Below are positions 50,326 to 59,426 of a stretch of 64,000 nucleotides of DNA, piece by piece. This DNA is from Calcarisporiella thermophila CBS 279.70 (taxonomy: Eukaryota; Fungi; Calcarisporiellomycota), in assembly GCF_041956535.1 (NCBI RefSeq), contig NW_027192195.1:412150-476149 (forward strand). The letters are read 5' to 3'. The notes under the pieces are model-generated. The model did no database searches. It was given only the letters and a program-made list of their open reading frames with translations, and was not told the origin of the DNA. The stretch's first letter is position 1, and the number at the start of each line of letters is the position of its first letter. The position numbers and the translations under genes were made by a program.

Positions 50326-51537
50326 GCACGAGGCGGCTTCCCCCGCCCCTCCCTCCACTCCCAAAACCAACAAAATGTCTCCGATATCTTCTCCATCTAT
50401 CCATCCATTATTCATATATGTAATCAGAATTATCTATACAATATGTACATACTGAATATAGTTCCGGTGGCATGTTTACGGATGAAAGCACCATGTTGCC
50501 TATTTCTTCCGGCATAAAATTGGTTTGGTTTCGGACGGTTGGGAGGAAGGAGGTGATACAGCTTGATTAGCCCACCTTGCTCCCTGTTCTTCTTGGGGGA
50601 CGGTGGTGTATAAGAAATAAATGAAATGAGAAGCCACGAAAACCTCCTCCATTCCGACCATCGGGTGGCAGAGCACACGTGCAGGCCCTCGCGCGAGTTA
50701 TACGAAAAAGGTCTTTCCGCAGAATACTTTGGTCCTATTTGGCCGCCCCCCTGTTTCGCTCTGGGATTCCGATTTTGAGTTTTCGAGGCTTTCCTTTTTA
50801 TATACTTATTCCTGCCATCAAGGTTCACCACCGGGCAAATCCAGCCGGGACATTTGAACCAAACCGGAAGAAATAGATGGATAATGTGGGGTAGAGAATG
50901 AGCACTTATCCTCAGGGACTGGAACGAGTGCGCCAAAATGAAAACAAAAAAGAGAGAATCATCAAATAAACGTGGTCGCGGAACCGGCTAATTTATCAGT
51001 GACCGGACGTGCTCTTCAGGATCGCGTGGCAACTTGATCATGTTTGATGCTCTGGCCTAGGGCTAATACCTCCCCGTCGCCTTCCCCTTCGTTCTAGCAC
51101 CCTGTCATCCCTCGACGTTTTTCGCATTTCTTCACGTGGAGGATCGCAGTCATTGGAGCCAGCTAAGATTCACATTTCCAAGGCGGTGGTGGTTTCCAAA
51201 AATCACCCTCTTTTCATCAATTACTCTTCATTTTTATCCCGTAATAGGGTCAATCTGGGGACTCTTGTGTGCAACCGCGGGAAAGAAGCACGGGAACTAA
51301 GTTCGCTTCCAAGCTCTATAAAAAAATTCTCTCCCCACACGATGTTTTTTTAAGATTTCTATTTCTCCCGCCTCGGTTTCTCCTCTACCTCTCCCCCTTT
51401 TTTCCCAGACTACCGCTCTTTCCCTCCCTTGTTTGAAAGTTCAAAGCGGACTGTTTTGCTGACAGCTTTCTTCCTTGATTCAATCTCGTAGCAGGAAACT
51501 AAAGAGAAGAGAGCAGAGAAAAAAAAAATTCCAGGAA

Positions 51538-53130
<1,593 letters not shown>

Positions 53131-53733: not shown

Positions 53734-55132
53734 ATGGCGAGCACAGGGAGTGAAGGCGGGCCAAAGACAAAGAAGCCTGCTAGTATGGTTTCCATCTCCG
53801 CATGTCCACCGGCTTTGCTCTGACTAATTTGCTTCCCCCTCTCCTAGACACTGCATTCAAGCAGCAGCGATTAAGAGCGTGGCAGCCGCTTCTGACACCC
53901 AAGGCGGTGCTGCCAACCCTGTTCATCGTGGGCATCATTTTTGCGCCCATCGGAGGCCTCCTGCTCTATGGCAGTAGCACGGTAAGTGGACCGTGGTTGC
54001 TGAAGATGATGTTCGGAAGACTTCACGATCCTCAATCCACAAAATAGGTAGCAGCCCTCACCATCGATTACACCAACTGCATGGATTCCATTGGGAATTT
54101 CCAGCCAATATCGTCGTATTCCTTCCGCCGCTCATTTTTCGCATCCGATTTGCCCGAGCCCCCCCAATACATGGGCACCCCCGACCAGCCACCCCTTTCC
54201 CCCAAATTCCCGCCCAACCTGAAAGTCTCGCGCTGCACCATCGATTTCGTCCTTCCCGCCGACATCAAGGCTCCCGTCTTTCTCTACTACCGCCTTTCCA
54301 ATTTCTACCAGAATCACCGGCGCTACGTCAAGAGCATCGATCTCAACCAGCTGAAGGGCGACCCCGTGCCCGTGACGACCCTCGAGAAGACATGCGTGCA
54401 GGTTGCAAAGTCCCCAGACAACAAGCCATACTATCCCTGTGGGCTGATTGCGAACTCCATGTTCAACGACACCATTGGCGATTTCACGCTGGCTCCTCAG
54501 ACGAGCATCCAATCCAACACAACCTACCGGTTCAGCAGCAAAAATATCGCCTGGCCCTCCGATATCAGGCGCTATGGAAACACAGGATACTCTCCGGATG
54601 CGTGTGTTCCGCCCCCGAACTGGTCCTTGCGCTACCCCGGAGGTGTCTATTCAAGCGCATTCCCCCCGCCCAACATCACGGAGGACGAGCACTTTATCGT
54701 CTGGATCCGCACAGCCCCGTTCCCCACGTTTCGCAAGCTCTATGGCCGCAATGATGCGGAGGATATGGTGGCGGGAAGGTACCGGGTGCAAATTGATATG
54801 AGTAAGTGTGACCTGGCTTGGCTTTCCCCACACATGTTCATTTGACCCCCTCTTTCTCCCTGCTAGACTATGATGTGAGAAAATACGGGGCTACCAAGTC
54901 TATTGTCATTGCCAGTGTCAACGTTCTCGGCGGGCGTAATATATTCATCGGATTCGCCTATCTCGCGGTGGGAATCATCTGCGTTGTTCTGGGCCTTCTC
55001 CTAACCGTGCGCCACTGTATCAAGCCTAGAAAACTCGGCGATCACGCCCAGCTCGCCTGGAAGGGCACCCCGACAGTACCGGTCCAGCTGGTGGCGCCTG
55101 AGGAGCGCTCTAAATCCTGGTTTAAGCGCTAG
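53734..55132 (+). CDS. CDC50: Cdc50/Lem3 P4-ATPase flippase beta-subunit
   Basis: [77 protein letters not shown] and KPRKLGD. Confidence 0.96.
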
Positions 55133-55876: not shown

Positions 55877-58800
55877 ATGACCTCCATTGTTCCTCTTATT
55901 TCGATGGGGCTCTTGAGGCTCTGGTTTCTGGCTCTCTTTTCGTGCTGTGTGGTGTGCTATGGTAGAGGTGAGGACGGCCATATTGGGCCCGGGGAGGGTG
56001 TAGAGCTCCGGTATGGGTGATTAACATGATGTTCTTGGTTTATGCATATACCCTAGACCATGTGTCGAAGCGTGCCCAGCGGGTTGGAGACAATATGACA
56101 CGGGTGCTGGGCGTCGGCGGGAGTTTCCCCCTTAGCATATACAACCTGTGGGCCGTCTCATACAACCAGCAGCGGAAAAATGAGGGTGTGGAGGTTCGCT
56201 ACGACGCCCGAGGCAGCGTGGCCGGAATCGAGGCCATTCTCGAGCCTGGCATCGTGGAGTTCGCTGGGAGCGAGTCCATGCTGAACGAGTCGAGCTACAC
56301 AGCCGGCGGCGATCTGCAGATGTTGCCGGTGCTTGCGGGTGCAGTCACCATTGCATATAACGTCCCCGAGATGATAAGCGCCAACTACCAACTGCAATTA
56401 TCGCGGGAGGCCATTGTTGGCATCTTTAACGGGACCATCCTCAGCTGGTCGCATCCAATGATACAACAGGCCAATCCTACATTCAAGGTATGTTACTTCA
56501 TGCGGCAACTCGAGTGTTTATTTTTTTTCCCTCCTGTCTACACATTGATTCATCATTCGTTCGACTAAACAATTTTCCATGGATGCGTTTTTTGCACCTT
56601 CACATCTGTATACGATAGCTTCCCGACCAGCCCATCCGACTGGTTGCTCGCAAGGACTCCAGTGGAACAACAAAGCTCTTCACTGCAGCGCTGTCTTCCT
56701 TTTCTCCCGACTGGGCCAGGACGATCGGCTCGAACGAGCTCCCCAAATGGCCACGCATCGACATCACGGCCCCCCTGAACAGCGGGGTTGCAAAATTCAT
56801 CTATGCGCTCAACTACTCCATCGGGTATCTGGACGACGCCGACTCCCATGAAAACGGCCTCTCCCACGCGATGGTCATCAACCGCCAGGGCCGCCCCACT
56901 TGGCCCAACAACACAAGCATCAGCAGCGCGATGAACGACTTCCAAGAGGCCCTCTACCAGTCTCCCACCTTCACCACCAGCTTGATCGATGGCCCGGGCG
57001 AGGCGTCCTACCCCATCTGTGGATTCACCTACTACATCATGCACCGGCGCAACTGGACCACCGAGGAGATCGCTCGCATGACCCTGCGCTACATCTGGTG
57101 GACCTACACCGACCCCTATGCGTTGCAGGTGGTCCAGCAGAGCCGGTTCGTGGGCCCGGTCCCCCAGATAAGAGAGCGGGTGCTCGAGATCCTGCGCACC
57201 GATTTTACGTTCGGCGGCCAACCCCTCTATGGGCGCTCGCCCTGCGACACCGGCTGTGCCAACGGAAATTGCCTTACCGACGGCGCATTTCATGCGCCCA
57301 GCGAGCAGTGCGTGTGTCCGAGCCAGTTCGAAAATGTCCTGTCCGGGGACTGCTCCGAGCCGGTGACCCCAGTGACGATTGAGTATGGATCGGTGGCGGG
57401 GGTGGTGTTCATCGTGTTGACCCTGCTTGTATTTTGTGCGGTGGCCGGGCTCATGGCCGTAATATGGCGGTTCAGGGAGCACCTGGTCGTGCGTTCCTCG
57501 AGCCCGTTGTTCATGGGACTGATGGCGCTGGGGCTGATGCTGGCGCTGACCAACGTGTTCTTCTACATGGGCCAGCTAAGTCCCTGGAAATGCATCGTGC
57601 TGCCCTATGTCTTGTCCTGTTCCTTTGGGCTGGTGTTTGGGATGCTGCTTGCAAAAACCTATCGGATATACGAGATCTTTGGTAGGTGAATGCGATGCTG
57701 CATTGGAAAGCTATGGGCTTCTGGTGGATGGTGCCGTGCGACTCACCCCCTCCCTTCTCTTTACCTTCTGATAGAAAACCCGCTGCTTATCAACAAGGCC
57801 ATCCCCGACAAGAACCTACTGATGTTTGGTGGTACGATTCTGGCGTTTGAAATCGTGAGTCTATCAACTTTTATCTGCTCTATGGGCCGAAGGGTTGACG
57901 GAAGATTGGGCTAACGATGGCCACTGATAGGTCCTCGTAACGATATGGATGGCGGTCGATTATCCGAAGCCGTCCATGATCACGACCGCTGCCGGGGAGC
58001 ATTCCCAGGTGTGCAATTCGGCCTCATCGCCCTTGCAAATCACCATGCTCACCCTGCTCTATGGATTCAATGCGCTTCTGTTGGTGTGCTGCATCTATCT
58101 TGCGTGGAAAACCCGTGGGGTCCACTCCTTCTTTAATGAGAGCCGCATCATTTCCTTCTGTGTGTATCTAGTCTCCATCCCCACGATCATCCTGCTGCCC
58201 GTCGTCTACATCCCCAATATTGGCGTTTATGCCCAGTTTTCCTTGCGCACCACCGTCGTCTTGATCTGCGTCGTGGCCACCACACTGCTCCTCTTTGTCA
58301 CTAAAGTGAGGCTCCTCCTATGGCCGCCCCGGGATCCTGAAGGGTCGACTACGTCGGGCCGTGTGTCAGACAGCTTAATGCTGTTTGAGGATCCTAACGA
58401 TCCTGCAAGTAGGTTCATCTTCTCAGAGGGCACCAGGGTAAACACTGCAACGGGCAGTTTGGCGGAGCTGCACCTTCCCACAGCAGCAACTCCCCGGGAG
58501 CAGTCTCCAAAGCAGAGTCCCGTGGACCAGCGGTGGACAAAGAACGTACAGGTAAGGGTTGGGAATGGTGGAGAGCAATTGGAGAAACTGCATGCGCTTT
58601 TAATCTCTGATCAACTCGCTAACGTCCCGATGTCCCCACCAGCTGTCTAGGTGGAATTTCCTCATGAAACGGTGCAGGCCCTTCTTTCCATGGAGACGGG
58701 TCTGCTTTATGCTGCTCAAGGAATACGATGTGCTGATGATACTACGTAGGATGCCGGATGGATCGGCTAAATGCATGCATATATTCCACGCATCCGCCCT

Positions 58801-59426
58801 CTCCTTTCATATGACAGATGATCCTTGCAGAGGGGTGTTGAAATCACAAGCGGGGACGTGGTTCCTCGAGACGAAAAGACGTGAGGATATCGCCGCATTT
58901 CTACAAATCTTTTCCGATAGAAACAGAGGGCTTGATGGAGGTAGCTGCATCGTTTTTTGTTGACTCTACCTCTTCCTCCCGCGGATTGGAACTGACCCTC
59001 GTGTCCATGCATTTTCTAGAGAACCGTCCGTTGGATGGCCAGACATCCAAGCCCTCTACTACTCCGGGAGTCACAGCGGCCGATGGCCGAGCCTCATATT
59101 CGGATCACTTTTCACCGACCTCCACCTTGAACGCCCCTTTCATGCTCTCTCAAAGTCGCGCCTCACCCTCGTCGCCCTTTATTCTAAACCGCCAATTACA
59201 GAGACTTGCCTCTGCCCCTGGCAATCTCAGCCACTCCCCCTCTTCCTCGAATCTCCAGGGATCCCCCGAGGGCTTTGGCAGCCAACGCCGCAAGAAAATG
59301 GCGGATATCTTGGAGATGGATATACTCAGTGATGATGAAGACTCTCACGGGGGAAGTAGACGCAAATCAACCGCCAACGCTCGGGCAGGTCCAGCCAACA
59401 GTAGGCCGGAATCAGAAAAGCACTAA
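55877..59426 (+). CDS. PstS phosphate-binding domain / EGF-like / class C (7tm_3) GPCR fusion with a probable C-terminal PH domain
   Basis: Seven exons (55877-55967, 56057-56487, 56619-57681, 57775-57854, 57931-58551, 58643-58940, 59020-59426) give a continuous 996-aa frame. PstS motifs: GGSFP, GSVAG, FAGSE, GAVTIAYNVP, RKDSSGTT, SIGY, SYPI. Class C 7TM motifs: RSSSPLF, LLAKTYRIYEIF, LAWKTR, FNESR. Confidence 0.9.

What the first reader, a model, noticed from the sequence alone, without database searches (positions are those of the whole stretch)
55877..59426. Candidate extracellular phosphate-sensing GPCR: a bacterial PstS domain replaces the Venus flytrap of a class C receptor
Seen in sequence: one spliced 996-aa frame with a signal peptide, a KR site, a complete PstS-like domain, a 6-Cys module, seven hydrophobic helices with class C signatures (RSSSPLF, LLAKTYRIY, FNESR) and a cytoplasmic tail. 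Established: animal class C GPCRs use a type I Venus-flytrap domain, whereas PstS is the type II phosphate-binding subunit of the bacterial Pst ABC transporter. Known fungal phosphate sensing works through the PHO pathway, SPX domains and transceptors, not GPCRs. Inference: this is a cell-surface receptor that couples external phosphate (or a related oxyanion) to G proteins, built from a prokaryote-type binding protein that has gained introns. Class C receptors with solute-binding-protein ectodomains are known from early-diverging fungi, so the novelty lies in the PstS-type ectodomain and must be checked.
Basis: partly seen in the sequence, partly recalled or inferred. Interest (0 to 1): 0.95.

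Follow-up and report, generated by a model that had tools for sequence, protein, structure and literature searches.

The report
Fungal receptor with phosphate-binding sensor domain
This fungal gene encodes a cell-surface signalling receptor whose outer part is a bacterial-type phosphate-binding protein with its pocket nearly intact, so it is a strong but untested candidate for sensing phosphate outside the cell; its relatives are old and widespread, and the domain pairing was listed once in 2012 without this reading.

Summary
Seven GT-AG exons give a 996-aa protein: signal peptide, PstS-type domain, EGF-like 6-Cys linker, class C 7TM and, new here, a cytoplasmic PH domain. Exon 3 alone carries half of PstS through TM3, so the fusion is no gene-model artefact.

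Seven of eight E. coli phosphate-contact positions are kept (Thr10 as Ser). The selectivity residue Asp56 is Glu here and in a paralogue, but Asp in 93% of family members.

The genome matches Calcarisporiella thermophila. The same architecture occurs in Endogone, blastoclads, chytrids and aphelids, with related fusions in a nucleariid and Plasmodiophora. Their PstS domains form one eukaryotic clade, so this is ancient, not a recent transfer. That clade also supplies the ectodomain of mollusc and nemertean receptor guanylyl cyclases.

Novelty is partial: Krishnan 2012 listed PBP_like_2 on a Spizellomyces class C receptor, and type II binding domains on fungal class C GPCRs are known. I found no paper reading them as phosphate sensors. 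The scan flagged the paralogue separately (s1-593801). Binding, G-protein coupling and expression are untested.

Best reading: an extracellular phosphate or close-oxyanion GPCR, about 0.6.

The parts
55877..55963 (+). Start codon and predicted signal peptide (aa 1 to about 29), exon 1 (55877-55967)
   Evidence: Hydropathy peak aa 8-26; exon map of the public record. No dedicated signal-peptide predictor was run.
55968..56056 (+). Intron 1, 89 nt, GTGAGG..TAG
56068..56073 (+). KR dibasic site (aa 35-36); not conserved, probably incidental
   Evidence: Absent in the paralogue and in four fungal or aphelid homologues
56101..57191 (+). PstS-type (type II solute-binding) ectodomain, aa about 46-365, split by intron 2
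   Evidence: PF12849, TIGR00975 and PDB PstS hits; paralogue model matches PstS with TM-score 0.90-0.93 by target
56122..56127 (+). Ser53-Phe54 = E. coli PstS Thr10-Phe11 (phosphate contacts)
56215..56217 (+). Ser84 = E. coli Ser38 (phosphate contact)
56272..56274 (+). Glu103 at the position of E. coli Asp56 (selectivity residue); derived change shared with the paralogue
   Evidence: Asp in Endogone and in 80 of 80 prokaryotic loci
56488..56618 (+). Intron 2, 131 nt, inside the PstS domain
56649..56669 (+). Arg185-x-Asp187-x-Ser189-Gly190-Thr191 = E. coli Arg135, Asp137, Ser139, Gly140, Thr141
57243..57353 (+). EGF-like six-cysteine linker (aa 383-419) in place of the nine-cysteine domain
   Evidence: Pattern shared with fungal and aphelid homologues; the shorter versions in two homologues hit EGF_2 at 2.1e-5 and 3e-3; the window's own segment gives no EGF hit
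57387..58311 (+). Class C seven-helix domain (aa about 431-682) with Cys499 and Cys583, Lys520/Arg523 in TM3, Glu625 in FNESR; TM7 reads FVTK (Thr679 where most members have Pro). Introns 3 (57682-57774) and 4 (57855-57930) lie inside
   Evidence: PF00003; motif table; coordinates
58312..58551 (+). Ser/Pro/Thr-rich cytoplasmic linker
58643..58924 (+). Cytoplasmic PH domain (aa 763-856) in exon 6 (58643-58940)
   Evidence: AlphaFold2 pLDDT 90, seven strands and a C-terminal helix; Foldseek hits are PH domains, probability 1.0; conserved in the paralogue (E=3.6e-8), Endogone and an aphelid
59020..59426 (+). Exon 7: Ser/Pro-rich low-complexity C-terminal tail and stop codon
   Evidence: No Pfam hit; composition

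Best explanation
A plasma-membrane class C-type GPCR that reports extracellular inorganic phosphate or a close tetrahedral oxyanion. Shown by sequence and models: a PstS-fold clamshell with a nearly intact phosphate pocket, an EGF-like linker, a class C seven-helix bundle and a cytoplasmic PH domain on one polypeptide. Inferred: phosphate closes the two lobes; the disulfide-held linker passes that movement to the helices, probably within a dimer (homodimer or with the paralogue); the bundle switches a heterotrimeric G protein; the PH domain binds phosphoinositides or G-protein subunits. Bacterial PstS binds phosphate very tightly (own knowledge), so Asp56->Glu in the two Calcarisporiella copies may retune affinity or pH dependence rather than abolish binding. 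The sign of the signal (phosphate as agonist or antagonist) is unknown.
For: Seven of eight phosphate-contact positions kept. Pocket columns are selectively conserved in 28 family members: 0.89 against a random mean of 0.46, reached in none of 100,000 draws; 21 of 28 keep S38, D56, R135, S139 and S/T141 together. The paralogue model matches PstS first; the first non-phosphate binder (ModA) ranks 50th. No PstC/PstA-type permease was found in the genome while all 14 controls ring, so a transporter role is unlikely. About 13 G-alpha loci are present. PstS and 7TM trees agree, pointing to a stable old fusion. Deposited structures show phosphate bound to D56N and D137N/T/G mutants (entry titles), so changes at these positions are tolerated. 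Two homologues are uninterrupted 3.3-3.5 kb reading frames on contigs of about the same size.
Against: No binding, signalling or expression data; no RNA run was listed. Asp56 is Asp in 80 of 80 prokaryotic loci and 12 of 12 animal cyclases but Glu here; the two Glu-bearing prokaryotic proteins checked are not beside pst permeases. TM7 has Thr for the usual Pro. A 2026 review says fungal Glutamate-class GPCRs still lack experimental validation (PMC13308352). Part of the pocket conservation could be structural.
Confidence: 0.6

Rival explanations
1. A receptor for another anion or a phosphorylated compound (phosphite, arsenate, sulfate, a small phosphoester or a polyphosphate end). The family may sense phosphate while Asp56->Glu has shifted the Calcarisporiella copies.
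For: Glu at position 56 is derived in both paralogues. Glu-bearing prokaryotic homologues sit next to sensor-type genes rather than pstCAB.
Against: Glu keeps the carboxylate that accepts the proton of phosphate and should still repel fully ionised sulfate (own knowledge of PstS selectivity). All other contacts are intact.
Confidence: 0.17
2. It binds phosphate but does not signal through G proteins. Output runs through the PH domain and the Ser/Pro-rich tail as a scaffold, or the protein is the ligand-binding subunit of an obligate heterodimer in the manner of GABA-B1.
For: A conserved PH domain, which animal class C receptors lack. TM7 Pro->Thr. A close paralogue and three flytrap-type class C genes could be partners. 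One relative carries an RGS domain instead (P0127).
Against: The TM3 Lys/Arg, the FNES Glu and the Cys499/Cys583 pair are kept; G-alpha genes are plentiful.
Confidence: 0.15
3. The PstS domain is only a scaffold, or holds phosphate permanently as a structural cofactor, and the real signal acts elsewhere (the helical pocket, or a peptide or protein ligand, as for GPR158/179-type receptors).
For: Weak similarity of the linker and TM1-3 to GPR179 (E about 1e-3). Second PstS copies in some relatives are degenerate. A tight binder could be saturated at ambient phosphate.
Against: Single-domain members keep the pocket across aphelids, chytrids, blastoclads and Mucoromycota.
Confidence: 0.07
4. An artefact: bacterial contamination, misassembly, or two genes merged by annotation.
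For: No RNA run was listed for this locus.
Against: Exon 3 holds PstS, linker and TM1-3 in one open frame. An intron lies inside PstS. The neighbours are CDC50 and CRAL-TRIO genes. A paralogue lies on another contig and about 30 homologues share the architecture.
Confidence: 0.01

Closest known systems
Spizellomyces punctatus SPPG_06488, class C GPCR with PBP_like_2 (Krishnan et al. 2012, PMC3251606)
   Same: Same family and architecture: PF12849 plus 7tm_3, six-Cys linker, conserved tail domain. NCBI names the record 'phosphate ABC transporter, phosphate-binding protein PstS'.
   Different: The paper gives a domain label on one sequence, with no phosphate reading, pocket analysis, PH domain or distribution. 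SPPG_06488 keeps Asp56 and has Pro at 137; this protein has Glu56 and keeps Asp137.
Gut-fungal class C GPCRs with type II solute-binding domains (Seppala et al. 2016, PMC5168858)
   Same: A type II binding domain replaces the flytrap in about half of them; EGF-like modules in some.
   Different: Read as carbohydrate-binding; 'phosphate' and 'PstS' do not occur in the text.
Bacterial PstS (E. coli PstS, TIGR00975)
   Same: Fold (TM-score 0.90-0.93 for the paralogue) and seven of eight phosphate contacts.
   Different: Fused to a receptor, glycosylation sites, Asp56->Glu, no permease partner found in the genome, separate eukaryotic clade.
Animal class C GPCRs: mGlu, GABA-B, CaSR, GPR158/179
   Same: 7tm_3 domain with TM3 and TM6 signatures. 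CaSR is inhibited by extracellular phosphate through Arg62 (PMC6795806).
   Different: No type I flytrap and no nine-cysteine domain. Phosphate would be the primary ligand rather than a non-competitive antagonist. PH domain in the tail.
PstS-ectodomain receptor guanylyl cyclases of molluscs and nemerteans (e.g. XP_074655677.1)
   Same: Ectodomain from the same eukaryotic PstS clade with an intact pocket.
   Different: Single transmembrane helix, kinase-like and cyclase domains; annotated only as generic cyclases; no paper found.

Membership tests
Class C (Glutamate) GPCR | 7tm_3 domain above the curated cut-off | tested here: met
   64.1 and 55.6 bits in two exons against a cut-off of 33.5
Class C (Glutamate) GPCR | Seven hydrophobic helices after an extracellular N-terminus | tested here: met
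   Hydropathy peaks starting at 433, 471, 500, 543, 592, 628, 663; topology inferred
Class C (Glutamate) GPCR | TM3 Lys/Arg, TM6-side Glu, TM3-loop disulfide cysteines | tested here: met
   Lys520, Arg523, Glu625, Cys499, Cys583; roles from own knowledge
Class C (Glutamate) GPCR | TM7 xPK motif | tested here: not met
   FVTK; Pro is present in most homologues
Canonical animal class C GPCR | Type I Venus flytrap (ANF_receptor) and nine-cysteine domain | tested here: not met
   PBP_like_2 and a six-Cys module instead; three other genes of this genome do carry ANF_receptor
Class C (Glutamate) GPCR | Dimerisation and G-protein activation | not testable with these tools
   G-alpha genes are present; no functional data
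PstS (TIGR00975) | Type II fold closest to PstS | tested here: met
   Sequence hits for this gene; fold search of the paralogue
PstS (TIGR00975) | Score above the equivalog cut-off (205 bits) | tested here: inconclusive
   Exons score 85.9 and 95.0 apart; the joined protein was not searched; the paralogue scores 203 and Endogone 183.7, both below
PstS (TIGR00975) | Phosphate contacts Thr10, Phe11, Ser38, Arg135, Ser139, Gly140, Thr141 | tested here: met
   Ser53, Phe54, Ser84, Arg185, Ser189, Gly190, Thr191
PstS (TIGR00975) | Asp56 | tested here: not met
   Glu103
PstS (TIGR00975) | Subunit of a PstSCAB transporter | tested here: not met
   No BPD_transp_1 match in the genome; fused to a 7TM
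PstS (TIGR00975) | Measured phosphate binding | not testable with these tools
   Needs purified protein
PBP_like_2 + 7tm_3 receptors (SPPG_06488 type) | PF12849, six-Cys linker, 7tm_3 and tail domain in order, grouping with the fungal members | tested here: met
EGF-like domain | Six cysteines with C-x-C before the last, and a profile match | tested here: inconclusive
   Pattern met; profile hit only in two homologues
PH domain | Seven-strand sandwich with C-terminal helix | tested here: met
   no Pfam hit

The most novel reading that the evidence does not exclude
An ancient eukaryotic PstS lineage serves as a dedicated extracellular phosphate sensor plugged into several signalling outputs: class C GPCRs with a PH tail in early-diverging fungi and aphelids, related GPCRs in a nucleariid and Rhizaria, and receptor guanylyl cyclases in molluscs and nemerteans. 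These would be cell-surface receptors whose primary ligand is inorganic phosphate, lost from or unrecognised in yeasts and vertebrates.
Probability: 0.5. Interest if true: 0.88.

Novelty: new variant of a known kind. Interest (0 to 1): 0.68.

Why it matters
How eukaryotes read outside phosphate directly is largely open. Yeast relies on transporters and internal SPX signals (own knowledge), and the animal CaSR senses phosphate only as a side input (PMC6795806). Fungal class C GPCRs have no validated ligand (PMC13308352). This family comes with a specific ligand prediction and named pocket residues, so one binding assay and one reporter assay can test it. Its presence in Mucoromycota close to plant-associated Endogone, and the parallel guanylyl cyclases in shell-forming molluscs, would open phosphate signalling in groups where none is described. 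The same design suggests a natural template for phosphate biosensors.

Tried and rejected
RNA evidence: no run was listed. An alternative 72-nt in-frame intron at 58746-58817 (972 aa) was rejected because it removes a PH strand that aligns in homologues. The nearby TAG acceptor at 58650 was rejected as the main form because it shifts the frame off the conserved PH domain. The KR site as a conserved processing signal was rejected. Recent bacterial transfer was rejected: one eukaryotic clade, support 99, and GC3 equal in PstS and 7TM exons, 0.79 and 0.75. A tungstate or molybdate binder was rejected by ranking. Looking for natural Glu56 PstS in pst operons found none. A 7TM-only homologue search returned only its query. 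One locus scan failed on a too-diverse alignment and one Pfam call on a frame slip. One CACGTK site upstream (55636) is not above chance expectation and was not pursued. Ten literature searches found no phosphate reading of this architecture; most subscription journals are not covered. As the operators asked, the joined spliced protein was not used as a query in any database search or fold job; it was searched exon by exon, and the public record P0001 was used only in local alignments, profile scans and trees.

Full report
Observation. The gene is real. Seven exons (55877-55967, 56057-56487, 56619-57681, 57775-57854, 57931-58551, 58643-58940, 59020-59426) are joined by six GT..AG introns of 76-131 nt and give 996 aa, identical to a public record returned by the representative search. 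Searched exon by exon, exons 2 and 3 hit PBP_like_2 and exons 3 and 5 hit 7tm_3, all above the Pfam cut-offs. The best solved relatives of exons 2 and 3 are PstS proteins, and TIGR00975 agrees. Exon 3 runs in one open frame from the second half of PstS through the cysteine module into TM3, so the fusion does not depend on any splice call. No RNA run was listed, so the single transcript is inferred.

Organism and paralogues. A second PstS plus 7tm_3 gene lies on contig C8. Its public record is from Calcarisporiella thermophila, maps exactly onto that locus, and comes from a contig of the same length, 1,236,294 bp, which identifies the genome as this Mucoromycota fungus. Three more class C genes carry an ordinary ANF_receptor flytrap. 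About 13 G-alpha loci and several SPX genes are present. No PstC/PstA-type permease was found, while all 14 control genomes match.

Anatomy beyond the finding's text. The six-cysteine module has EGF-like spacing and recurs in fungal and aphelid homologues. Shorter versions in two homologues hit EGF profiles; the window's own does not. Exon 6 folds with pLDDT 90 into seven strands and a helix, and its structural matches are PH domains. This PH domain is shared with the paralogue, Endogone and an aphelid, and aligns with chytrid and blastoclad tails. The 7TM keeps Lys520 and Arg523 in TM3, Glu625 and the Cys499/Cys583 pair, but has Thr for the usual TM7 Pro. The KR site is not conserved.

The pocket. 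E. coli PstS holds phosphate with Thr10, Phe11, Ser38, Asp56, Arg135, Ser139, Gly140 and Thr141 (PMC6549937). The matching residues here are Ser53, Phe54, Ser84, Glu103, Arg185, Ser189, Gly190 and Thr191, and Asp137 is kept as Asp187. In 28 receptor-linked domains these eight columns average 0.89 conservation against a median of 0.39, and 21 keep the five key side chains together. The model of the paralogue's ectodomain (pLDDT 94.6) matches PstS structures first, with TM-scores of 0.90-0.93 by target; the first non-phosphate binder ranks 50th. The weak point is Glu103. That position is Asp in 80 of 80 prokaryotic loci, in Endogone and in 93% of the family, and Glu in both Calcarisporiella copies. 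Deposited structures show that D56N still binds phosphate (entry title), but I found no data on D56E, and two prokaryotic Glu variants lie outside pst operons.

Distribution and origin. About 30 of the top 150 hits have both domains. Named ones come from Endogone, Paraphysoderma, Amoeboaphelidium, Spizellomyces and many other chytrids, with related fusions in Parvularia (plus RGS) and Plasmodiophora (two PstS copies). In a quick maximum-likelihood tree, 44 eukaryotic or unassigned receptor ectodomains fall on one side of a branch with support 99, apart from 55 prokaryotic PstS. Caveats: a short search, some long branches, no topology test, and a prokaryotic sample chosen by similarity. Within fungi the PstS and 7TM trees recover the same groups (Calcarisporiella pair with Endogone, Paraphysoderma, most chytrids), and the flytrap-type 7TMs of this genome group apart. 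The simplest reading is an old fusion inherited vertically in fungi and aphelids. Whether the protist fusions share that origin is unresolved.

An unexpected parallel. The same PstS clade forms the ectodomain of single-pass receptor guanylyl cyclases in nemerteans and molluscs, several on chromosome-scale contigs. Their pocket is intact, with Asp56, Arg135, Ser38 and Ser139 in 12 of 12. I found no paper on them.

Mechanism. Shown: the domain order, the folds and the pocket residues. Inferred: phosphate closes the clamshell, the linker moves the helices, probably in a dimer, and a G protein is switched, with the PH domain binding lipids or G-protein subunits. I put this at 0.6. The rivals are another anion or phosphoester (0.17), phosphate binding with non-G-protein or heterodimer output (0.15), a scaffold-only domain (0.07) and artefact (0.01).

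Prior work. Krishnan et al. 2012 list PBP_like_2 on the class C receptor SPPG_06488 (PMC3251606). Its supplementary sequence starts like P0157, a member of this family. Seppala et al. [quoted passage not shown] CaSR is a class C receptor inhibited by phosphate at Arg62 of its flytrap (PMC6795806). A 2026 review says fungal Glutamate-class receptors still need experimental validation (PMC13308352). So the domain pairing is on record as a label. The phosphate-pocket reading, the EGF and PH modules, the distribution and the animal cyclases were not found in the searched library, which lacks most subscription journals. The scan's own notes flagged the paralogue and three sub-features; I had derived these before looking.

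Verdict. A real and well-supported candidate phosphate receptor, a new variant of a known kind, with a specific and cheap test. Interest 0.68.

Noticed in passing
P0035 (XP_074655677.1, Tubulanus), P0179-P0185, P0066, P0082: Receptor guanylyl cyclases of nemerteans and molluscs carry a PstS ectodomain with an intact phosphate pocket in place of the flytrap; annotated only as generic cyclases; no paper found. A candidate animal phosphate receptor.
   Followed up: partly
G000:C8 about 418400-421630, minus strand (L015): Paralogue with the same architecture and the same Asp56->Glu. Its public record (518 aa) stops early by reading into an intron after TM3; the rest of the 7TM and the PH domain follow downstream.
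   Followed up: yes
G000:C2 about 971.5-974k, C22 about 570.5-573.5k, C6 about 169-172k (L016-L018): Three class C GPCR genes with an ordinary ANF_receptor flytrap; possible relatives of the candidate trisporic acid receptors of PMC5705715, not tested.
   Followed up: partly
P0127 (Parvularia atlantis): PstS + 7tm_3 + RGS on one chain.
   Followed up: partly
P0006 (Chromosphaera perkinsii), P0012, P0019, P0014, P0015: Eukaryotic or unassigned proteins with two to four tandem PstS domains and other outputs: WWE/PARP (P0012), ANF_receptor plus many helices (P0019). Later copies are often degenerate.
   Followed up: partly
P0147 (L102-L104) and P0126 (L105-L106): Prokaryotic PstS-like proteins with Glu at position 56 lie beside a sensor kinase and response regulator (once near PhoX) or a HAMP protein, not pstCAB.
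   Followed up: partly
window about 53800-55132, + strand: Upstream neighbour is an ordinary CDC50/LEM3 flippase subunit gene (E=1.2e-65); a CRAL-TRIO gene lies at about 51475-53020.
   Followed up: partly
G000, whole genome: About 13 G-alpha loci in a 28-Mb fungal genome against only five class C receptors found.
   Followed up: no
window 55636: One CACGTK (Pho4-like) site about 240 nt upstream of the start codon; a single match, not above chance.
   Followed up: no
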